Position numbers and translations under genes: made by a program. A stretch of 64,000 bases of DNA from positions 124,001 to 188,000 of the IMG/VR virus record IMGVR_UViG_3300027770_001980. One strand, given 5' to 3'. Below, piece after piece: positions 7,831 to 27,968 of this stretch. The notes beneath the pieces were generated by a model that searched no databases, was not told the DNA's origin, and saw only the letters and a program-made list of their open reading frames with translations. Positions within the stretch are counted from its first letter, which is position 1. The number at the start of each line of letters is the position of its first letter.

Positions 7831-8742
7831 ATGACTACCCACATATCCCCTACTGGGAAAAAAGTAAAATACCTAAACAATCGCGATTTATTGACAGAGA
7901 TACACAGAAGTAAATGCTCATTTGGTAGTTTTACAGATCCAAAATATCAACAACACGACATCATATTAACAAATTTGGATAAAGTTAATATTAGAACCGT
8001 AGCCGAAGCCAAACGTAATAGAGCGAAACGAGAAGGTATATTGGCGTTTGGTGCAGCCAGAATAGCAGGCGATAAAAAAATCAAACTTGCAGAATGCACA
8101 GCAGACTATAAAACCATAGCTAAAACCGATATTGTGATACGTATTATGACTTTTGATCACATACCCATGGCACCGGGACGTAAAAAAACACTAAAGAATA
8201 CAGCCGATAGTCATGAGAAAGTTAACTTTCCTCCTTATCAACATTGGAAGTTTAACGACGAAGATGAATTGATCTGCGTAGGTAAGAGCCACTGGAAAGG
8301 CCCAATCGAAACTGGCAAATTTAGCAAAGATCATGGACGCATTACTGAGAACTTGGGCAGGATGTTTATTAAATTAAGTGAACGATATGCACAAAGAAGC
8401 AACTGGCGGGGGTATACTTACAATGAAGAAATGCGGGGACAGGCGATCCTACAATTAAGTCAAATTGGACTACAGTTTGACGAGAGCAAATCAGAGAACC
8501 CATTTGCATACTACACCGCAGCAGTCACTAACTCATTTACTCGTGTTCTAAATATTGAAAAGAAAAATCAAAACATTCGAGATGACATGTTGGAAGAAGC
8601 CGGATTGACTCCAAGTATGACTCGACAGTATAAACAAGAGTATGCTGAAGAAACTGCTCGTCAAGCAGAACTATACAAACACTTTAGGCAACCTAAATCA
8701 GAAGAAACAAGCATTGAGGAAGATGAGCAAACTGATGTTTGA
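7831..8742 (+). CDS. gp55: Late-transcription sigma factor, T4 gp55-like, with a long internal insertion
   Basis: YLNNRDLL at the N-terminus; NWRGYTYNEEM and SENPFAYYT...SFTRVLNIEKK match gp55-family motifs; adjacent to gp47/gp46 as in T4. Confidence 0.85.
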   Translation: MTTHISPTGKKVKYLNNRDLLTEIHRSKCSFGSFTDPKYQQHDIILTNLDKVNIRTVAEAKRNRAKREGILAFGAARIAGDKKIKLAECTADYKTIAKTDIVIRIMTFDHIPMAPGRKKTLKNTADSHEKVNFPPYQHWKFNDEDELICVGKSHWKGPIETGKFSKDHGRITENLGRMFIKLSERYAQRSNWRGYTYNEEMRGQAILQLSQIGLQFDESKSENPFAYYTAAVTNSFTRVLNIEKKNQNIRDDMLEEAGLTPSMTRQYKQEYAEETARQAELYKHFRQPKSEETSIEEDEQTDV

Positions 8743-9801: not shown

Positions 9802-11582
9802 TGTTTCGACTTAAAAATATCACAGTTAAGAACTTTCTTAGCGTAGGAAATCAAACCCAAGCAGTGGACTTTGATAAACAGGCCCTGACATTGGTATTAG
9901 GATCTAACCTCGATCTCGGCGGTGATGATACCGGTTCTCGTAATGGTACCGGTAAAACTACCATCGTCAACGCATTATCGTATGCATTATACGGTCAAGC
10001 CCTAACTAATATCAAACGAGAAAACTTAATCAACAAAACTAACGGCAAATCCATGTTAGTTACTGTTGAGTTTGAAAAGAATAATACAAAATTTCGTATA
10101 GAGCGTGGTCGTAAACCCAACATATTGAAACTATTTGTCAACGATAGTCAACTAAAAACAGAAGATAGCGAGGACGATAGCCAAGGCGATAGTAGAGAAA
10201 CACAAAAGGCCATTGAACAAATGTTGGAAATGAGCCATACAATGTTCAAACATCTTGTGGCCTTGAATACCTACACAGAACCTTTCTTGAGTATGAAGGC
10301 TGCGGATCAGCGTGAAGTCATTGAACAACTGTTAGGTATCACTTTATTAAGTGAAAAAGCAGAAGCATTGAAGATTTTAGTCAAAGAAAGCAAGGATCTT
10401 ATACAGCAAGAGTCATTTAAGATCGAGGGTATCAAGGCTGCTAACGAAAATGTGCAGAAAAGCATTGATAGTTTAGGTATTAAGAGCAGTGCTTGGGAAA
10501 CAAAGAAAGATTCTGACATTGAAAACTTAGGTCGTGCTATGATGCGACTTGAAAATGTCGATATTGAAGCAGAATTAGCAGCACATGCTCAACTTAAAGT
10601 ATGGGCAGAGAACAATACCAAGATATCAAACCTTAATCGACAGAAGGCAACTCTGGAATCTGCTGTAGGGCAGGCTGAAAAAACTGTTAAGAAGTATGAG
10701 CGAGAGTTAGAAAGCCTTGCAAATAAAACGTGTCATGCTTGTGAACAGGAACTTCACGATCATAAACATGAAGAAATGACCACTGTTGCTGTCCAACATT
10801 TAGAAGAATCAATGAAATACTTTGATAAGGTATCTCAAGACTTACTAAAGATTGTAGATGAAACCACACAGATAGGCACACAATCACGTAGACCTGAAAC
10901 TTTCTACGATACAGAAGCAGAAGCATTAGGACACAAGAATAATTTAGATGGATTAGAGAAAAGTCTAACCACAAGGATTGGCGAATCAAACCCTTACGAA
11001 GAACAAATCGAAGAATTAAAGAAGACCGCTATACAAGAAATCAATTGGGCTGCTGTAAATGAGTTAACCAAGCTCAAAGATCATCAAGAGTTCCTACTGA
11101 AACTACTGACCAACAAGGACAGTTTTATCCGTAAGAAAATTATCGATCAGAATTTAAGTTACTTAAACAAGCGATTGAGTTATTATATTGACAAACTCGG
11201 ATTGCCGCATCGTGTTGTATTCCAAAATGATTTAAGTATTGAGATCACGCAGTTAGGACAGGATTTAGATTTTGATAATTTAAGCAGAGGCGAGCGTAAC
11301 AGATTGATCCTAAGTATGAGTTTTGCTTTCCGAGATGTTTGGGAAGGGCTATATCAAAGTATCAATTTATTATTTGTAGATGAACTTATGGATGCTGGTA
11401 TGGATGCTGCCGGTGTAGAAGCCGGATTAGCGGTTCTAAAGAAGATGGCCAGGGAACGCAATAAGAATATATACTTAATATCACACAAGGATGAGTTAGT
11501 AGGTAGGGTAAACAATGTGCTTAGAGTTATCAAAGAAAATGGTTTTACCTCCTACAGCAACGATGTAGACTATGTCGAGTGA
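9801..11582 (+). CDS. gp46: Recombination ATPase subunit, Rad50/SbcC-like
   Basis: Walker A NGTGKT, coiled coil with CHAC zinc hook, signature LSRGE, Walker B LLFVDE, ISH loop. Confidence 0.93.
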   Translation: MFRLKNITVKNFLSVGNQTQAVDFDKQALTLVLGSNLDLGGDDTGSRNGTGKTTIVNALSYALYGQALTNIKRENLINKTNGKSMLVTVEFEKNNTKFRIERGRKPNILKLFVNDSQLKTEDSEDDSQGDSRETQKAIEQMLEMSHTMFKHLVALNTYTEPFLSMKAADQREVIEQLLGITLLSEKAEALKILVKESKDLIQQESFKIEGIKAANENVQKSIDSLGIKSSAWETKKDSDIENLGRAMMRLENVDIEAELAAHAQLKVWAENNTKISNLNRQKATLESAVGQAEKTVKKYERELESLANKTCHACEQELHDHKHEEMTTVAVQHLEESMKYFDKVSQDLLKIVDETTQIGTQSRRPETFYDTEAEALGHKNNLDGLEKSLTTRIGESNPYEEQIEELKKTAIQEINWAAVNELTKLKDHQEFLLKLLTNKDSFIRKKIIDQNLSYLNKRLSYYIDKLGLPHRVVFQNDLSIEITQLGQDLDFDNLSRGERNRLILSMSFAFRDVWEGLYQSINLLFVDELMDAGMDAAGVEAGLAVLKKMARERNKNIYLISHKDELVGRVNNVLRVIKENGFTSYSNDVDYVE

Positions 11583-11937
11583 GAATTATAATAGATATAA
11601 AGAAATACATTCAGAATATCTCTCGCGGTTTGTAGATTTGCATAACTATCATCAAGAGTTTCTCGACTTTCCTTCGTTTCAGAAGGGTGCAAGGGTTAGA
11701 AAAGCCATTTCCGATATGATTATATTGGAGAGAAAGTTACGCAAACTCTCGTCAGCAGTGTATGCTGAGCATAAGAAAAATGTCAAAGCAGGTCACATAG
11801 CAGAAAAACGAGAGAAAGCAAGACTAAGGGCTCTTCCAAAGAAGCGTGGAAGGCCAAAAGTAAAAGAGATAGTAGTTAACACAAGAGGTCGAGGAAGACC
11901 AAGAAAGGACGAAAATGTCAACAACACAACAAATTAA
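11572..11937 (+). CDS. Basic DNA-binding protein: Hc1-like helical region plus two AT-hook motifs
   Basis: KGARVRKAISDM resembles AGTRARKALADL of the next gene; KKRGRPK (11839-11859) and RGRGRPRK (11884-11907). Confidence 0.55.
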   Translation: MSSENYNRYKEIHSEYLSRFVDLHNYHQEFLDFPSFQKGARVRKAISDMIILERKLRKLSSAVYAEHKKNVKAGHIAEKREKARLRALPKKRGRPKVKEIVVNTRGRGRPRKDENVNNTTN

Positions 11938-12115
11938 AGATCAAGTAGCATTATTCTTATCAGAAGATGCAAAATTTGCAGCAGGTAATAGTGCTGCTGG
12001 AACCCGTGCCCGTAAGGCATTGGCAGATTTAGGCAAAGTCATGAAGACTCGACGCAATGAAATCACTGCTGAGAAGAATGCTCGCAAGGAAGCCAAGGCG
12101 GCAATGGGTCAATGA
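11915..12115 (+). CDS. Histone H1-like nucleoid protein (Hc1-type family)
   Basis: Motif GNSAAGTRARKAL, matching the GNKAAGTRARK signature of bacterial/phage Hc1-like proteins; 66 aa, K/R/A-rich. Confidence 0.7.
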   Translation: MSTTQQIKDQVALFLSEDAKFAAGNSAAGTRARKALADLGKVMKTRRNEITAEKNARKEAKAAMGQ

Positions 12116-12540
12116 CCTGGTACCATAAAGGTTCTATAGTTACAGAACTGCCCGAGGATTGTGTGGGATTCGTTTATCTTATCTCATGCAATACTTCTGG
12201 TAGGCTCTATGTTGGCAAAAAATTAGCAAAGTTTGCAAAGACGACCTACAAAACTGTAAAGTTAAAGAACGGCACTAAGAAGAAAAAGAAGATCAGAAGC
12301 AAGATCAACAGCGACTGGCAAGAATATTATGGCTCCAGTGCGGAACTTACCGCAGATATAGAAACATTAGGCAAAGAAAATTTCACAAGAGAGATATTAC
12401 ATTACTGTAAAAGCAAAGCAGAAACATCTTACGTTGAGGCCCGTGAACAATTCGACCGCAAAGTATTAGAATCAAATGAATATTATAACGGACAGATCTC
12501 AGTCCGTGTCCATGGCTCCCACATAAAAAACAAAATTTAG
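12112..12540 (+). CDS. Stand-alone GIY-YIG family nuclease
   Basis: GFVYLI...LYVGKK, DWQEYYGSS, FTREIL, EAREQF, YYNG motifs; ATGA overlap with the Hc1-like gene. Confidence 0.75.
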   Translation: MTWYHKGSIVTELPEDCVGFVYLISCNTSGRLYVGKKLAKFAKTTYKTVKLKNGTKKKKKIRSKINSDWQEYYGSSAELTADIETLGKENFTREILHYCKSKAETSYVEAREQFDRKVLESNEYYNGQISVRVHGSHIKNKI

Positions 12541-12979
12541 GCTCAGTTAATCGGTTACAAGGCTCGCACCTGCTAATTTCTGGTGCCCGGAAACCTGGAT
12601 CTCGGATCACAGGGAGGGAAATCTCTTGCCGATAAGAGTGCTCAACTACTACCCGAAAGGATGAAGATCGCTATAAAGCCCTGCGATTTAGTTGTTTGAA
12701 GATGAATTTATAGGCAAAATGAAGGGAGAAAAACCCTGGGTTTACAATATGATAGCGTATATATGTAAACTGCCGTTGGATGAAGACGGAGCTCGTGGTA
12801 CCGGACAACCGCCACTGTAATGCTCTAACGCTGTGTGACTGTTCGAACTCGGATAATGTCTTTTTTTCGCCCTTGAGCGGGCGAAGTGTGACCAAGGAAT
12901 CTGGATAATATTAATTCGTCTCTAAGACGAAGTAAATTGCTCTGAGTGCGAACGAAAGAGCAAATGAACTGCGTTCATT
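12541..12979 (+). ncRNA. Candidate large structured non-coding RNA (or hairpin-rich origin); family not recognised
   Basis: Longest non-coding gap in the window, more GC-rich than other intergenic DNA, tiled with at least 11 stems (listed in findings). Strand assumed from upstream operon. Confidence 0.6.
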
Positions 12980-12987
12980 TATAAATA
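12980..12987 (+). promoter_or_regulatory. Late promoter TATAAATA
   Basis: Exact T4 late consensus 23 nt upstream of the ATG at 13011. Confidence 0.75.
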
Positions 12988-13010
12988 ACAAATACATTCA
13001 GGACTTCCAT

Positions 13011-15182
13011 ATGGACATACGGCAATTAACTTCAAGATTAGATCGAATAGAAAATAATAGATTATATGAAGGTCTAACTCTGACTGAAGTAAAGTCAGTT
13101 AAGTTATGGGAGAACGCTGGCCGATTAATTAAAGAAGCAGCCCTAACTCCTGATCAAGTACAACAACTATTCACCAGTATAGAGCAAGGTGCAACTGCTG
13201 CTGGTGGCAATAGAACCATGATAGGCAAAGGTAAAGATGCTGCGTCTGCTGTTAACAAAGCATGGGAAGATCTAAAAACCAAAGTTCAAAACAGTGCTCC
13301 TATTGCAAATGTAGATTCTGCATATGATAGTGCTGTAGCCAAAATTGAAGCAGGGTTAGGTGGGCCTGACAATGCTGTTAATCAAGTTATTCAAAAGTAT
13401 AGAGCATTTGCCAAAGCACATCCAATTGCACAGGGGTTGATCTATTCAGCCCTTATTGCTGCTGCTGGTATCAGTGGAGCAGGATTAGGTGGGGCTGCTG
13501 TATTAGGTCTGTTAAAGATGACAGACAAGTTGCTGCAAGGTGAGAAGTTTTCCAGTGCTGCTTATAGTGGTGCTAAGACCGGTGCAATGGCATATGGTGC
13601 AAGTCAGATTGGAAAAGCATTGAAAGGTGGGGATAACGCAGGTAATAGCGGACCTCATCCTAAAGGTGATACAGCAGCAGGTGGAACTGACTCTTCGAGT
13701 TATTCTCATACTGTAGGGGAGATTAATCCTAAAACCGGTCAACAACTATATTCAATAAATCAGGATGGAACTTATGATTATGGTCCTCCGGGGCTAAGTG
13801 ATGATCAATGGTTAGATTTAAAAAATCAGGCTCGACATCAACTTAGCGGTGGCGGAGACTCAGGAGCGGATCAGGCTGTTTCTGCAAAGGCCAACATGGC
13901 TTCACACCGAGGAGCAGCAAGCGGTGACATGAAGCCCGGTGACTACCAGAATATGCCAAAAGGATATAACCAACAAGCATATGATGAATATTTAAAATCA
14001 CATCCACCCATTGGTAATAGTATCCAAGCAAAAATGATTGCAAAAGACATGGCGATGCGGCATGCTAAAGAGCAGGGATTTGATCAGGCTGTTTCTGCAA
14101 AGGCCAACATGGCTTCTGGAAATACCGCAAACCTCAGTCAGGACCAAGTTGCTGCAATGGATGGTGGAGACAATCCATTAGGTATAACTGCAAGACCAAG
14201 TATAAACAATGTAGATCAACCAGGATCAGTTGATGTTCCGGGTAGTGATAATCCATTAGGTATAACTGCAAGACCAAGTATAAACAATGTAGATCAACCA
14301 GGATCAGTTGATGTTCCGGGTAGTGATAATCCATTAGGTATAACTGCAAGACCAAGTATAAACAATGTAGATCAACCAGGATCAGTTGATCTTCCGAGTG
14401 ACAACCCATTGGGCATAACTGCAAGACCGTCGATGAATGTAGCACCTGGTGACTTTCCACCTGCAGCCGATACAGCAATTAATCGTCTAACTGGCAAACC
14501 GTTTACTAACTTTAAAGCACCATCGTGGACTGACATGTCTCCCGAACAACAGGCGGCTTTTACTCTTAAACAGCAAGCACAGGCCGCCGACGCTGCCCAA
14601 GCAGCACAAAATGCCAAAGATTATTGGGCCAACAAGTCTCCTTTAACACGCGGTTTAAAAGAAGGTGTTCAATTATCTGAAAGACAACTTGCCACATTAT
14701 TCACATTGATTCAGATTAAAAATCGTCAAGTCAATGAAGGCATGTGGGATAGTATCAAAGGTGCTGCAGGAAAAGCAGCAGGTGCAGTAGCTGATAAAGC
14801 CGCAACGGTTGGTAAGAATTTAACCACTAAAATCACCGCAGACAAATTAAACTCAGCATGGAAGAAAGCCGGTAGCCCAACAGACAGTGAGCAAGTAGCA
14901 CAGGTGATTCAAGGTGCCGGTGCAGATCCAGCATTGGTTTCAAAAGCCTTTACAGATTTAGGAATTCCTGCACCGACTGGTGAGATACAAGATCCTCCGA
15001 TGTCCAAAAATGATAAAGCAGCACCAGGAACCGATACAGCCGCAGCAGGACAACCGGATGAATTAGATGCAGTTAAAAAAAATGCAGGACTTCCTGTAGT
15101 AAATATCAAAGATCTGCTTGTACAGATAATGGCTTTATCCCCCGAAGAACAAAAGCAAGTATTAGAATACTTAAAGAAATAA
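13011..15182 (+). CDS. Putative internal head/ejection protein with tandem repeats
   Basis: Late promoter; many (L/V/I)-x-E sites (LYEG, IKEA, LKEG, VNEG) of the gp21-protease cleavage type; hydrophobic Gly/Ala segment; repeat-containing middle. Confidence 0.5.
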   Translation: MDIRQLTSRLDRIENNRLYEGLTLTEVKSVKLWENAGRLIKEAALTPDQVQQLFTSIEQGATAAGGNRTMIGKGKDAASAVNKAWEDLKTKVQNSAPIANVDSAYDSAVAKIEAGLGGPDNAVNQVIQKYRAFAKAHPIAQGLIYSALIAAAGISGAGLGGAAVLGLLKMTDKLLQGEKFSSAAYSGAKTGAMAYGASQIGKALKGGDNAGNSGPHPKGDTAAGGTDSSSYSHTVGEINPKTGQQLYSINQDGTYDYGPPGLSDDQWLDLKNQARHQLSGGGDSGADQAVSAKANMASHRGAASGDMKPGDYQNMPKGYNQQAYDEYLKSHPPIGNSIQAKMIAKDMAMRHAKEQGFDQAVSAKANMASGNTANLSQDQVAAMDGGDNPLGITARPSINNVDQPGSVDVPGSDNPLGITARPSINNVDQPGSVDVPGSDNPLGITARPSINNVDQPGSVDLPSDNPLGITARPSMNVAPGDFPPAADTAINRLTGKPFTNFKAPSWTDMSPEQQAAFTLKQQAQAADAAQAAQNAKDYWANKSPLTRGLKEGVQLSERQLATLFTLIQIKNRQVNEGMWDSIKGAAGKAAGAVADKAATVGKNLTTKITADKLNSAWKKAGSPTDSEQVAQVIQGAGADPALVSKAFTDLGIPAPTGEIQDPPMSKNDKAAPGTDTAAAGQPDELDAVKKNAGLPVVNIKDLLVQIMALSPEEQKQVLEYLKK
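13869..14116 (+). repeat. 35-bp exact direct repeat (13869-13903 and 14082-14116) encoding DQAVSAKANMAS
   Basis: GATCAGGCTGTTTCTGCAAAGGCCAACATGGCTTC occurs twice, in frame. Confidence 0.9.
14169..14430 (+). repeat. In-frame 78-bp tandem repeat (~3.4 copies) encoding DNPLGITARPSINNVDQPGSVDVPGS
   Basis: Units start at 14169, 14247, 14325 and 14400 (third unit 75 bp). Confidence 0.95.
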
Positions 15183-15193
15183 TAGGAACCCAT

Positions 15194-16429
15194 ATGAAAA
15201 TTTCTCAACTCGTTACGACTAAAACAAAAACTCCATATCATGAAAGTGTAGCCGGAAGATTACCAAGGGGTATTAAATCTCAGCAACAACTGTTAAATCT
15301 TGGATACAGGATTGCGGTTGAAGATCTTGGATTAACAAAAGCAAAAACATTAAATGAAAACTTTGCCATCAAATTAATTAATTCATATCATACTCAATGT
15401 TTAAATGAAGGTATTGGGTCATTCTTAGGTAAAGCAGCAGGGCATGTTGTAGGAGCAGTAGGTGCTGCCGGTCGTGGAATTAAAGGAGCATGGGACGATG
15501 CTAAACAAGGGTATCAACAAGGTAAAGCATGGTGGGGAAGCGGAGAAGGTCCAACAGCAAGTGGAGCAGCACCAGCCGCAGGTGGAGCAGCACCGGCAGC
15601 AGGTGGAGCAGCACCGGCAGCAGGTAGTCCTACTACAACTACATTAACCAATCCAGGTAATAATAACGCACCGGGTGGATCGGCGGAACCGGAAGCCGCA
15701 CCTTCACCGGGCGGCGCAACACCAACACCACCGGCAGCAGGAACACCTCCAACTACAGGTGGTAAAGGTGTAGGTGACATCATGAAAGCTATTGATGGAT
15801 TAGATCCTGCAAGTAAAAAACAATTAGCAGGTGAATTAGATAAAAGTATCAAAGCAGCACCACCAGCAGGTGCTGCACCAGCAGGAGCAGAAGATCCTAA
15901 TAGTGGTACCAAGACTGGCACAACAAATCCAGGTGACTGGGCAGCAGATGGAAGAGATGCCTCGGCAGCAGATCATGCAACACCGGCAAATGTAAAACCA
16001 GCAGCAGGTGGAACAACACCTCAGCCAGACGAATTAGATGCTGTTAAAAAGAATGCAGGACTTCCAACAGGCGCAACTACACCAGCAGCAGGCGCAACTA
16101 CACCAGCAGCACCCGGAGCAACTCCACCAGCAGCACCCGGAGCAACTCCACCAGCAGCAAAAGCACCTGTAACAGGAACATCAGGTGGAGCAGGTAAAAG
16201 TATGATGGACTTAAAAGGTGCCGGCGTTAGCAATGCTTCACAATTAGCTAATCTACAAAAAACTGGAGCAGCAAATTTAGCAGCGGAAAAAGGAGCGGCA
16301 AATATGAACATACAGAAACCAACTTTTGCTGCTGATAAAAGAACTCCTGCCCAAATAGCTAAAATGAAACAAGCCGGATTTAGAGAAGAAGTTGAATTCC
16401 ACAGCAACTTCCTCGGTCGGAAGATTTAA
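15194..16429 (+). CDS. Putative internal head/ejection protein, Pro/Ala/Gly/Thr-rich
   Basis: LNEN, LNEG and FREE sites; shares QPDELDAVKKNAGLP with the upstream gene; short tandem repeats GAAPAAG and GATTPAA/PGATPPAA. Confidence 0.5.
   Translation: MKISQLVTTKTKTPYHESVAGRLPRGIKSQQQLLNLGYRIAVEDLGLTKAKTLNENFAIKLINSYHTQCLNEGIGSFLGKAAGHVVGAVGAAGRGIKGAWDDAKQGYQQGKAWWGSGEGPTASGAAPAAGGAAPAAGGAAPAAGSPTTTTLTNPGNNNAPGGSAEPEAAPSPGGATPTPPAAGTPPTTGGKGVGDIMKAIDGLDPASKKQLAGELDKSIKAAPPAGAAPAGAEDPNSGTKTGTTNPGDWAADGRDASAADHATPANVKPAAGGTTPQPDELDAVKKNAGLPTGATTPAAGATTPAAPGATPPAAPGATPPAAKAPVTGTSGGAGKSMMDLKGAGVSNASQLANLQKTGAANLAAEKGAANMNIQKPTFAADKRTPAQIAKMKQAGFREEVEFHSNFLGRKI
15560..16160 (+). repeat. Short in-frame tandem repeats: ~3x21 bp (GAAPAAG, ~15560-15625); 2x21 bp plus 2x24 bp (~16068-16160)
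   Basis: Directly visible repeated GGAGCAGCACCGGCAGCAGGT, GGCGCAACTACACCAGCAGCA and CCCGGAGCAACTCCACCAGCAGCA. Confidence 0.85.
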
Positions 16430-26501: not shown

Positions 26502-26969
26502 ATGTTAGATCAGGTACAACAATATAATCTTGTATTTCCTAAAGAATTGATTAAAAATATCTACGTCTTGAAAAATAAAAATAGACCAATCTTAAGAAGT
26601 AATAGGTTAGGATGGCAATCACCACAATATGAAAACACCAATGATATCAAATGGATCAATAATTTTTTATCAGAATGCATGACAATTTCTAATATAACTG
26701 AGTTGCCAAATCAAATATGGTTTAATATAAGTCCAAAAAATGCATATCACGATTGGCATAGTCATGGTAGATATAATCGTATAGGAGTATTCTATATACA
26801 AATTCCAGAGAACAGCGGAAACATAGAATTTAAAGATAATGATACAATCTATTCTATCACACCATACGAAGGATTATTGTTAATTGCTCCTGGGGGAGTT
26901 GAGCATCGAGTATTATCTAACAATTCAGATCAAGATAGAATAAGTATGGCGTTCAACTTATCCAATTAG
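26502..26969 (+). CDS. 2OG-Fe(II) oxygenase-like protein
   Basis: HDWHSH...HRV...RISMAFNL iron/2OG-binding pattern; very AT-rich; own TAAATA-N4-ATG. Confidence 0.7.
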   Translation: MLDQVQQYNLVFPKELIKNIYVLKNKNRPILRSNRLGWQSPQYENTNDIKWINNFLSECMTISNITELPNQIWFNISPKNAYHDWHSHGRYNRIGVFYIQIPENSGNIEFKDNDTIYSITPYEGLLLIAPGGVEHRVLSNNSDQDRISMAFNLSN

Positions 26970-27055
26970 TATAAATACACTGTTCACTCTTAGGTTAGAG
27001 TTTATGCGGAACCCCACCGCGTAGTAGATAGAATCTACTAGTTTATTTTAAGGAG
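26970..27055 (+). promoter_or_regulatory. Late promoter TATAAATA followed by a triple-hairpin 5' leader and SD
   Basis: TATAAATA 26970-26977; ACTCT/AGAGT, TATGCGG/CCGCGTA, TAGTAGA/TCTACTA; AAGGAG 27050-27055. Confidence 0.65.
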
Positions 27056-27062
27056 AAACAAA

Positions 27063-27968
27063 ATGGGACGTCCAATTAAAAAGAAATTTTTCGGTAATAC
27101 AATTACCCCATATCAAGATCACGCCACTGGTGGAAAAACAGGTGTAGGCGGGGAAGGTGTAGCATCAATTGCTGGCAGCGGCAGCGGTGGTTCGCTATAT
27201 TCTCAAGGTTCTGTTGTATCTGTTGCAGCCCCGGGTCTTACAGGTGGTATCCAGGCAACCGTTACTCAATCAATTACTGCTCCGGGCGGCGTTATTACTA
27301 TATCGGTAAACAATCCAGGATCTGGCTATTTGACTGCGCCGGCAATCTCTGTTGCTAAAGCAGCAACAGTTACTAAAGCAACAACAACAGGCACAAGTGC
27401 TACTAACACAATTTATGTAATTAATACAACAGGTTTGTATGTTGGCATGCAGGCTGCTGGTACTAATCTTAGTGGAACTGCAACAAATTATGTTACGTCT
27501 ATCGTGGGATTAGCAATTGGTCTAACCTGGCCTAATACTGGCACCGTATCTACTACTGTAACTTTCAGTGATGAAGGTACAAGTTTCAGTAGAACAGCAG
27601 TGTTAACAAGCACACGTCAAGATTCAATTAGATTTGCGTCAACACTCACTGGCGGAAGTGTACGCACTACTGGTGATATTCTTAAACAAGAAGGTAGTCA
27701 TCGTTATCTGATTCAGAACACCGACGGTAAAGGTATTTGCAAATTAGTAGCTAAAGAAAATGCTGATTTATTGGCAGGTGAAATGAATATCATCGCAACT
27801 GACTATAATGGCAATACATATTTTGTAACAAAACTAACTGCAAGAAAAGCACGTTTGGTACATCTTGTTAATAACGAAGCCGATTGGTTAGTAGCCGATG
27901 GTGGAGTAGCTGGATGGACTATTGGTGCAGCAACTGCTACAAAAGTTAGTATTGCACACTCAAACTAA
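27063..27968 (+). CDS. Virion structural protein, Thr/Gly-rich (possible head decoration)
   Basis: Own late promoter, strong SD and terminator suggest high expression; MGRPIKKKFFG start. Confidence 0.55.
   Translation: MGRPIKKKFFGNTITPYQDHATGGKTGVGGEGVASIAGSGSGGSLYSQGSVVSVAAPGLTGGIQATVTQSITAPGGVITISVNNPGSGYLTAPAISVAKAATVTKATTTGTSATNTIYVINTTGLYVGMQAAGTNLSGTATNYVTSIVGLAIGLTWPNTGTVSTTVTFSDEGTSFSRTAVLTSTRQDSIRFASTLTGGSVRTTGDILKQEGSHRYLIQNTDGKGICKLVAKENADLLAGEMNIIATDYNGNTYFVTKLTARKARLVHLVNNEADWLVADGGVAGWTIGAATATKVSIAHSN

What the first reader, a model, noticed from the sequence alone, without database searches (positions are those of the whole stretch)
12541..12979. ~440 nt hairpin-tiled non-coding element directly behind a GIY-YIG nuclease gene: candidate new large ncRNA
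Seen stems: GCACC/GGTGC (12566-86); CCTGGATC/GATC-a-CAGG (12594-613); CTCTT/AAGAG (12623-38); CAACTA/TAGTTG (12643-94) enclosing CC-GAAA-GG and GATCGC/GCGATT; AGGG/CCCT (12723-37); GTTTACA/TGTAAAC (12740-70); CCGTT/GACGG (12773-89); nested GAGC-GTGG-CGG/CCG-CCAC-GCTC (12789-825); TTCGCCC/GGGCGAA (12866-85); TTCGTC/GACGAA (12915-31); TTGCTCT/AGAGCAA (12937-63); ATGAAC/GTTCAT (12964-78). The loop GCCGAT (12628-33) could pair with ATAGGC (12710-15) as a pseudoknot. GGATGAAGA and GGATAAT each occur twice. No U-tailed terminator separates it from the nuclease gene, and every other intergenic gap is under ~160 nt. Inference: an ornate RNA comparable in size to ROOL/GOLLD/HEARO classes, possibly the RNA partner of the adjacent nuclease; alternatively a replication origin.
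Basis: partly seen in the sequence, partly recalled or inferred. Interest (0 to 1): 0.82.

Follow-up and report, generated by a model that had tools for sequence, protein, structure and literature searches.

The report
Full-length Polynucleobacter-1 phage RNA
The 440-base gap behind the nuclease gene encodes a real, highly folded non-coding RNA of freshwater T4-like phages; its first third is already catalogued (Rfam Polynucleobacter-1, function unknown), while its last third, with two always-identical sequence boxes, appears undescribed.

Summary
Window 12549-12978 (+) is a real structured non-coding RNA of about 430 nt. It is not a new class. Bases 12561-12697 match Rfam RF01718 (Polynucleobacter-1 RNA) over the full model at 108 bits. 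The central helices and one pseudoknot are already drawn in the 2010 supplementary alignment of that motif.

The whole 430 nt is conserved at 72-93% in more than 130 viral and metagenome contigs. It has about 20 helices and three pseudoknots supported by compensatory changes, no codon periodicity, and G-U pairs only on the + strand.

The 3' 150 nt (12835-12978) seems undescribed. It holds two 7-nt boxes, 12851-57 and 12903-09, that are identical to each other in 80 of 81 distinct sequences although nine alleles exist. This is identity covariation, not base pairing, and I could not explain it.

The RNA sits at the end of a gp55-gp47-gp46-GIY-YIG gene block, just before a T4-type late promoter. 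It persists where the GIY-YIG gene is replaced or displaced and where no co-oriented downstream gene exists.

- Nuclease partner: poorly supported.
- Downstream leader: poorly supported.
- Replication origin: poorly supported.
- Most likely reading: a stand-alone, trans-acting RNA. This function is inferred, not shown.

The parts
12112..12540 (+). Upstream gene: 142-aa GIY-YIG-only protein (SegE-type catalytic domain, no DNA-binding domain)
   Evidence: Pfam PF19835, E 2.8e-32. Directly upstream of the RNA in 116 of 120 loci.
12549..12978 (+). Full structured RNA, about 430 nt
   Evidence: Aligns at 72-93% identity in more than 100 viral contigs. Covariation seen. The 5' limit is set by loci with other upstream genes, where similarity starts at the pk1 strand.
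12550..12554 (+). pk1, 5' strand; pairs with the P3 loop at 12629-12633
   Evidence: 12551/12632 are TA26, AT21, GC20; 12553/12630 are GC73, AT8. More variants.
12561..12697 (+). 5' domain = Rfam RF01718 Polynucleobacter-1 (helices P1 12566-86, P2 12595-612, P3 12623-38, P4 12643-94 with two inner hairpins)
   Evidence: 108.2 bits against a gathering score of 37, model positions 1-141 of 141.
12723..12737 (+). P5 hairpin
   Evidence: All 4 pairs show changes on both sides (helix 1).
12740..12770 (+). P6 long hairpin; its loop 12752-12757 forms pk2 with 12829-12834
   Evidence: 12 of 13 pairs show changes on both sides. For pk2, 12756/12830 are TA42, CG37.
12775..12779 (+). pk3 strand; pairs with 12805-12809 inside the P8 hairpin loop
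   Evidence: 12777/12807 are TA58, CG23; 12778/12806 are GC63, AT17.
12788..12826 (+). P8 hairpin (outer 12788-92 x 12822-26, inner 12795-98 x 12812-15)
   Evidence: helices 3-5.
12851..12857 (+). Box A (GGATAAT, after invariant CTC)
   Evidence: Identical to box B in 80 of 81 distinct sequences across 8 alleles.
12866..12885 (+). P9 hairpin between the boxes
   Evidence: helix 1: 98% paired, 4 pairs with changes on both sides.
12903..12909 (+). Box B (GGATAAT, after invariant TCT)
12915..12931 (+). P10 hairpin, variable in sequence and length
   Evidence: Alignment A4. Often has a TTCG loop in relatives.
12937..12963 (+). P11 hairpin with inner 2-bp stem
   Evidence: helices 2-3: 100% paired, every pair with changes on both sides.
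12963..12979 (+). P12 terminal hairpin
   Evidence: helix 4: all 6 pairs with changes on both sides.
12981..12988 (+). TATAAATA, a T4-type late promoter for the downstream gene (not part of the RNA)
   Evidence: Exact motif at this place in 42 of 63 distinct loci, about 25-35 nt before the next ORF. A gp55-like late sigma factor is encoded at 7831-8742.
13011..15182 (+). Downstream 723-aa gene, variable between relatives
   Evidence: Homolog present in only 22 of 120 loci. No Pfam or PHROG match.

Best explanation
Window 12549-12978 (+) encodes the full-length form of the Polynucleobacter-1 RNA, a ~430-nt non-coding RNA.

**Architecture**
- 5' domain: the part held in Rfam.
- Central pseudoknotted domain.
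- 3' domain: two identical boxes, each followed by a hairpin, then two closing hairpins.

**Location.** It is carried by freshwater T4-like phages. It lies at the end of the late-sigma / Mre11 / Rad50 / GIY-YIG gene block and just before a late promoter.

**Mechanism (inferred).**
- It is made by transcription running on from the upstream gene.
- It acts as a free-standing, trans-acting RNA.
- The two boxes are two equivalent recognition sites for one partner, most simply a nucleic acid read by base pairing.
- The nuclease genes beside it are neighbours in a DNA-metabolism module and a landing place for homing endonucleases. They are not its obligate partners.

**Shown:** identity, extent, structure and context. 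**Inferred:** transcription mode and function.
For: **Identity**
- RF01718 matches at 108 bits over the full model.
- The upstream flank matches that of a 2010 seed scaffold.

**One RNA, not three**
- Ascertainment through the 5' motif always brings the 3' part.
- Ascertainment through box B always brings RF01718.

**Structure**
- Central domain: 97.4% of cells paired, covariation 0.548 against 0.170 in shuffles and at most 0.085 when the partner is slid.
- 3' domain: 99.2% paired, 0.516 against 0.186.
- Pseudoknots are 89-97% paired against 6-44% when slid.
- G-U pairs far outnumber A-C pairs in well-aligned helices, for example 132 to 2 and 121 to 2.
- No codon periodicity.

**Independence from neighbours**
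- The downstream gene varies. 8 of 63 distinct loci have only a convergent gene. 42 have TATAAATA between the RNA and the next ORF.
- The RNA is kept behind other genes in L069, L035, L295 and L299.

**Transcription**
- No terminator and no conserved promoter lie before it.
- Lake metatranscriptome contigs bridge the GIY 3' end into the RNA.

**Boxes**
- Identical in 80 of 81 distinct sequences across 8 alleles.
- A ninth, very different allele (AGCGAAA) is again mirrored in the Polynucleobacter chromosome copy and in GOS scaffolds that were found through the 5' domain only.
Against: - No partner for the boxes was found. No cis complement lies within 560 nt either side. Reverse complements within about 10 kb occur at chance frequency: 54 seen, about 55 expected.
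- Transcript ends are unknown. The metatranscriptome data are contigs of relatives, may include DNA, and stop aligning near 12848.
- A nuclease gene of one family or another sits directly upstream in nearly all loci: GIY-YIG, PD-(D/E)XK or UvdE. A functional link to nucleases is therefore not excluded.
- One sequence (L253) has discordant boxes.
Confidence: 0.6

Rival explanations
1. It is a 3' untranslated element of the early/middle operon. It protects the transcript's 3' end, ends transcription, or insulates the early unit from the late promoter that follows. It has no trans function.
For: - It lies at the operon's end with no terminator before it.
- The last hairpin abuts the late promoter.
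- In loci with a convergent downstream gene, a terminator-like hairpin follows P12 (alignment).
- RNA-library contigs bridge the gene and the RNA.
Against: - A single hairpin would do that job. Here about 20 helices, 3 pseudoknots and invariant single-stranded stretches are kept at higher identity than the flanking coding sequence.
- The twin boxes are unexplained by this reading.
- In L299 the RNA follows a terminator hairpin and so looks separately transcribed.
Confidence: 0.2
2. It is the RNA cofactor or guide of the nuclease encoded just upstream, by analogy with the omega RNAs of IscB and TnpB.
For: - A GIY-YIG gene lacking any DNA-binding domain is directly upstream in 116 of 120 loci.
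- Where it is absent, the upstream gene is another nuclease in L069 (PD-(D/E)XK) and in L295 (UvdE).
- The boxes could be guide-like.
Against: - The GIY family is found in 746 cultured-phage records. In the three closest examined, the gaps behind the gene are small and Rfam and both models find no such RNA.
- In L035 the GIY gene is 1.9 kb away, with radical-SAM genes in between.
- All type I loci are syntenic relatives, so their adjacency is not independent evidence.
- There is no hypervariable guide segment; only nine box alleles were seen.
Confidence: 0.08
3. It is a cis-regulatory leader (riboswitch-like) of the downstream late gene, as the 2010 table marked the motif as likely cis-regulatory.
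For: - A + strand ORF starts about 30 nt after the element in 52 of 63 distinct loci.
- The 2010 table lists cis-regulation as 'y' and riboswitch as '?'.
Against: - Downstream genes are not homologous across loci.
- 8 distinct loci have no co-oriented downstream gene.
- A late promoter lies between the RNA and the ORF, so late transcripts would not contain the RNA.
- The 2010 supplement itself says the RNAs lie downstream of a gene family.
Confidence: 0.05
4. It is a DNA-level element: a replication origin, or protein-binding repeats, with the boxes acting as iteron-like sites.
For: - Two direct repeats that stay identical would suit one DNA-binding protein.
- It is the largest gap I saw in this part of the genome.
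Against: - Compensatory changes keep Watson-Crick and G-U pairing of the + strand only.
- There are only two repeats.
- There is no skew switch.
- The boxes lie between helices that covary as RNA.
Confidence: 0.04

Closest known systems
Polynucleobacter-1 RNA motif (Rfam RF01718; Weinberg et al. 2010, PMC2864571)
   Same: - Bases 12561-12697 match the whole 141-position model at 108 bits.
- The upstream gene family is the same as in the 2010 description.
- The 2010 Stockholm file already holds helices equal to my P5, P6 and P8 and a pseudoknot equal to pk2.
   Different: - Rfam's model stops after 141 nt, and the 2010 motif stops after P8.
- Not annotated in either: pk1, pk3, and the 3' 150 nt with twin boxes and P9-P12.
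- In 2010 no purified phage had it. Here it lies in viral contigs with T4-like genes.
- The cis-regulatory label is not borne out.
GOLLD and ROOL large ornate RNAs
   Same: Large, multi-helix RNAs of unknown function, associated with phages and, for GOLLD, with lake samples (PMC5737381).
   Different: - No match to any Rfam family other than RF01718, even at E up to 10.
- From memory, this RNA is smaller than GOLLD and ROOL.
- Not near tRNA genes: none in the 64-kb window.
HEARO / omega RNAs of IscB and TnpB
   Same: A structured RNA placed directly beside a nuclease gene.
   Different: - The nuclease fold differs (GIY-YIG).
- There is no Rfam match.
- There is no hypervariable guide.
- The RNA and the nuclease each occur without the other.
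- The resemblance is positional only.
Free-standing homing endonuclease genes beside conserved RNA genes in T4-like phages (from memory: segB in the T4 tRNA cluster)
   Same: - Nuclease genes gather next to a highly conserved RNA gene.
- L039, L093 and L102 carry a 243-aa homing endonuclease inserted at the GIY gene's 3' end, with a recoded duplicate of the last codons.
   Different: - The core 142-aa GIY-YIG gene is fixed in this clade and lacks a DNA-binding domain, so it is not itself a typical homing endonuclease.
- No cleavage site was tested.

Membership tests
Rfam RF01718 Polynucleobacter-1 RNA | Covariance-model score at or above the gathering score over the full model | tested here: met
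   108.2 bits against 37, model positions 1-141, E 1.6e-22.
Rfam RF01718 Polynucleobacter-1 RNA | Consensus helices and the conserved CACAGGGA-N-GGAAA junction | tested here: met
   Alignment to the model. Helices are 98-100% paired in 81 relatives.
Rfam RF01718 Polynucleobacter-1 RNA | Lies downstream of the GOS11034 / P-SSM2 PSSM2_218-like gene (2010 supplement) | tested here: met
   The flank of a 2010 seed scaffold ends with the same coding tail as the window's GIY gene. The GIY family is present in cyanophages.
Rfam RF01718 Polynucleobacter-1 RNA | 'Tail' helices and tail pseudoknot of the 2010 alignment | tested here: met
   P5, P6, P8 and pk2 are present and covary.
   No family other than RF01718 matches at E up to 10 on 12300-13200 or on 12695-12995.
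Nuclease guide RNAs (omega RNA type) | Obligate co-occurrence with its nuclease | tested here: not met
   The RNA occurs without an adjacent GIY gene in L069, L035, L295 and L299. The GIY gene occurs without the RNA in Melnitz, ACP17 and BUCT-ZZ01.
Nuclease guide RNAs (omega RNA type) | Hypervariable guide segment at one end | tested here: not met
   Both ends are conserved helices. The only co-varying single strands are the two boxes, with nine alleles.
Riboswitch or cis-regulatory leader | Sits in the 5' UTR of a conserved regulated gene, with an expression platform | tested here: not met
   The downstream gene is variable or absent, and a late promoter lies between.
Riboswitch or cis-regulatory leader | Binds a ligand | not testable with these tools
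   Needs in-line probing or binding assays.
Replication origin | Iteron array, AT-rich unwinding element, skew switch | tested here: not met
   Two repeats only. GC is 0.40-0.43, like the flanks. Cumulative skew rises steadily through the region.

The most novel reading that the evidence does not exclude
The twin boxes may be a recognition device of a kind not yet described.
- Either they are two equivalent pairing sites through which the RNA reads one trans nucleic acid. That would possibly steer the nuclease, repair and ligase proteins that are encoded around it in three very different sub-types.
- Or they are two strands of a parallel homo-base-paired helix bridged by hairpin P9. That would explain identity rather than complementarity.
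Probability: 0.08. Interest if true: 0.9.

Novelty: new member of a known kind. Interest (0 to 1): 0.5.

Why it matters
- An orphan Rfam motif listed as a 141-nt sRNA turns out to be one third of a 430-nt, triple-pseudoknotted RNA.
- That RNA is kept by a large clade of uncultured freshwater T4-like phages. Remoter versions exist in other phages and in a Polynucleobacter chromosome.
- This puts it among the large phage-associated RNAs of unknown function, and gives correct boundaries for structure work.
- The boxes stay identical through nine alleles. That is a rare kind of covariation and offers a simple experimental handle: change one box, then both.
- For annotation, it shows that the 'cis-regulatory' label and the nuclease-partner idea should not be carried over.

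Tried and rejected
- **Cultured-phage DNA search:** no DNA match to the region.
- **tRNA/tmRNA scan:** none in the window.
- **Promoter and terminator scans:** nothing above chance on the + strand.
- **Coding reading:** rejected by the lack of codon periodicity. The 74-aa minus-strand ORF at 12671-12895 is spurious.
- **Cellular genomes:** the exact-pattern scan gave 50 hits, of which only two short phage-like contigs binned in one MAG were real. The pattern misses divergent copies such as the Polynucleobacter one.
- **Metagenome scan:** my box-B pattern was too loose. About 21 of 120 hits were real.
- **Helix between 12841-46 and 12893-98:** it holds only in one sub-group (43-84% paired) and was dropped.
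- **Cis partner of the boxes:** none within 560 nt either side. Reverse complements within about 10 kb occur at chance level.
- **Pairing of the boxes with the pk3 strand:** considered by eye on the alignment. The boxes do not covary with it.
- **Unbiased search for more type II members:** a 16-mer scan found only the three already held.
- **Metatranscriptomes:** the single read-laying run gave contigs of relatives only, so no transcript ends.

Full report
**What is there.** The gap between the GIY-YIG gene (12112-12540) and the next ORF (13011) holds no ORF longer than 75 aa. Rfam places RF01718, Polynucleobacter-1 RNA, at 12561-12697 on the + strand. The score is 108.2 bits against a gathering score of 37, over the full model. 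Nothing else in Rfam matches 12300-13200, or 12695-12995 alone, even at E up to 10. Folding of the single sequence is only marginally better than shuffles (z = -1.92). The case therefore rests on relatives.

**Relatives.**
L016 is the window's own 221-kb contig.
- BLAST shows that the whole of 12541-13010 aligns at 72-93% identity in every locus with enough sequence, not just the Rfam part.
- Per-column identity is higher in the RNA than at the start of the downstream gene.
- A pattern that constrained only box B of the 3' domain recovered about 21 more members from metagenomes. All 11 divergent ones tested carry RF01718 just upstream, at 75-124 bits.
- The domains therefore always travel together.
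- No cultured phage has the RNA.
- In 185,579 species genomes, the exact pattern hit only two short phage-like contigs binned in one MAG.

**It is RNA, from the + strand.**
- The GIY ORF shows codon periodicity of column entropy (0.59/0.48/1.14). The RNA shows none.
- RNAalifold on 60 sequences below 93% identity gives 77 pairs, 51 of them with compensatory changes.
- I built two covariance models, R1 (12698-12842) and R2 (12835-12985). R2 hits once in every true locus. R1 does too, except in the very divergent L110 and L021. Neither hits the chance match L078 or the three cultured phages.
- On the resulting alignments, 97.4% and 99.2% of cells are paired. Covariation scores are 0.548 and 0.516, against 0.170 and 0.186 in shuffles (0 of 500 reach the observed value) and at most 0.088 when partners are slid. 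These alignments are fitted to the models, which favours the structure. The independent MAFFT alignment agrees.
- In well-aligned helices G-U pairs far outnumber A-C pairs, for example 132 to 2 in P4b and 121 to 2 in P6b. This fixes the strand.

**Architecture.**
- *5' domain:*
  - P1 12566-86, P2 12595-612, P3 12623-38.
  - P4 12643-94, with two inner hairpins and an extra covarying pair 12649/12663.
  - pk1 joins 12550-54 to the P3 loop 12629-33.
  - pk1 covaries richly (ATCGG/CCGAT, ATCAG/CTGAT, GACAG/CTGTC, CATCG/CGATG).
  - In loci with a different upstream gene, similarity to the window begins at the pk1 strand. That fixes the 5' end about 9 nt after the GIY stop codon.
- *Central domain:*
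  - P5 12723-37, P6 12740-70, P8 12788-826.
  - pk2 joins the P6 loop 12752-57 to 12829-34.
  - pk3 joins 12775-79 to 12805-09 inside the P8 loop.
- *3' domain:*
  - Box A 12851-57, P9 12866-85, box B 12903-09.
  - P10 12915-31, variable and often with a TTCG loop.
  - P11 12937-63 and P12 12963-79.

CCGTT/GACGG and the GCCGAT x ATAGGC pseudoknot are not.

**The twin boxes.**
- Boxes A and B follow invariant CTC and TCT respectively, and lie 52 nt apart.
- They are identical within a locus in 80 of 81 distinct sequences, through eight alleles: GGATAAT, AGATAAT, GAATAAT, GCATAAT, GGATGAT, AGATGAT, GGATGAA and GGAAAAT. L253 is the one exception.
- The three bases before CTC/TCT usually match too.
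- The order is the same in both boxes, so this is not base pairing.
- The 2010 seed sequences were found through the 5' domain only. They show a ninth, very different allele, AGCGAAA, again in both boxes. It occurs in the Polynucleobacter chromosome copy and in GOS scaffolds.
- I found no third partner. None lies within 560 nt either side. Reverse complements within about 10 kb occur at chance frequency.
- This remains unexplained.

**Context.**
- The gene order is: gp55-like late sigma (7831-8742), Mre11-like, Rad50-like, an AT-hook protein, an Hc1-like protein, GIY-YIG, the RNA, then TATAAATA and late genes.
- The GIY-YIG gene is directly upstream in 116 of 120 loci. All of these are syntenic relatives, because Rad50 is also present in 108.
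- Downstream genes vary. 8 of 63 distinct loci have only a convergent baseplate-hub gene. 42 have an exact TATAAATA between P12 and the next ORF.
- Exceptions upstream:
  - L069 has a PD-(D/E)XK nuclease instead.
  - L035 has two genes in between, a radical-SAM gene and a 151-aa ORF.
  - L039, L093 and L102 have a 243-aa homing endonuclease inserted at the GIY gene's 3' end, with a recoded duplicate of its last codons.
- The GIY family itself is found in 746 cultured-phage records. In Melnitz, ACP17 and BUCT-ZZ01 no comparable gap or RNA follows it.

**Remoter relatives.** A twin-box pattern with the AGCGAAA allele found six viral contigs that RF01718 does not detect.
- L294, L297 and L298 are hit by R2 (E 1.5e-12 to 1.6e-7) and R1 (E 6e-6 to 2e-4). 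They again lie behind a GIY gene of 59-65% identity.
- L295, L296 and L299 are a third type.
  - In L295 the RNA lies behind a UvdE endonuclease.
  - In L299 it lies behind an unknown gene and a terminator hairpin.
  - DNA ligase genes lie nearby in L295 and L299, and an RNA ligase gene in L295.
  - Only L299 is weakly hit by R2, at E 0.007.
- The central and 3' parts are thus kept where the Rfam part has drifted.

**Expression.** Four lake metatranscriptomes hold contigs of relatives (mostly below 95% alike) covering Hc1, GIY and the RNA to about 12848. Some of these bridge the GIY 3' end into the RNA, for example 12447-12839 and 12287-12583. Depth is higher there than over the end of Rad50. 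Contigs have no direction and may include DNA. This is weak support for co-transcription and says nothing about transcript ends.

**Prior knowledge.**
- The 2010 paper lists the motif with 16 members, RNA 'y', cis-regulatory 'y', riboswitch '?'.
- Its supplement says three things:
  - the 3' half is not always detected;
  - most members lie downstream of a gene family similar to P-SSM2 PSSM2_218;
  - none was seen in a purified phage.
- Its Stockholm file already draws my P5, P6, P8 and pk2, and ends the motif after P8. The rest is shown as unaligned flank.
- A full-text search found no other paper naming the motif.

**Verdict.** The element is a member of a known orphan family rather than a new class. 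Its true size, two more pseudoknots, the 3' domain with twin boxes, the firm phage context and the remoter sub-types add to what is on record. Function is not shown. A stand-alone trans-acting RNA fits best. The 3' UTR role is the main rival. Nuclease cofactor, downstream leader and origin are each contradicted by tested features.

Noticed in passing
window 26985-27065 (+): A second Rfam hit: freshwater-2 RNA (RF02980, 66 bits against a gathering score of 49.9). It lies between a 2OG-Fe(II) oxygenase-like gene (26502-26969) and an unannotated 301-aa ORF starting at 27063.
   Followed up: partly
L039:3869-4597, also L093 and L102: A 243-aa homing endonuclease (phrog_314, GIY-YIG motif) is inserted at the 3' end of the core GIY gene. 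The core gene ends in recoded codons, while the original last ~30 nt persist in frame at the end of the inserted gene, next to the RNA. This looks like a homing footprint.
   Followed up: partly
L069:4127-4639; L295:1120-2148; L035:4681-6488: Where the GIY gene is not adjacent, the gene directly upstream of the RNA is a PD-(D/E)XK nuclease in L069 and a UvdE endonuclease in L295. In L035 it is an unknown 151-aa protein following a radical-SAM gene.
   Followed up: partly
Polynucleobacter NC_009379.1:2130672-2131206 (sequence printed in the 2010 supplement): The chromosomal copy has the twin boxes as AGCGAAA. The same 7-mer also appears in the loop that corresponds to the P8 hairpin. This three-way identity is not seen in the phage copies. 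I could not fetch its gene context.
   Followed up: no
L253:1370-1522: The only sequence with discordant boxes (GGATGAA against GGATAAT). It could be a real exception or a chimeric metagenome contig.
   Followed up: no
window 13011-15182 and 15194-16429: The two downstream proteins (723 and 411 aa) match no Pfam or PHROG family. Both are low-complexity. The first holds three near-identical ~25-aa repeats (DNPLGITARPSINNVDQPGSVD...). Their length and presence vary widely between relatives.
   Followed up: no
window 11572-12115: A T4-like phage encoding an AT-hook protein (121 aa) and a chlamydial Hc1-type histone-like protein (66 aa, Pfam E 1.2e-13), between the Rad50-like and GIY genes.
   Followed up: no
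cultured-phage records under the GIY match: Homologs of the 142-aa GIY-YIG protein are widely annotated as 'NAD synthetase' (phrog_447). This looks like a propagated misannotation of a GIY-YIG domain protein.
   Followed up: no
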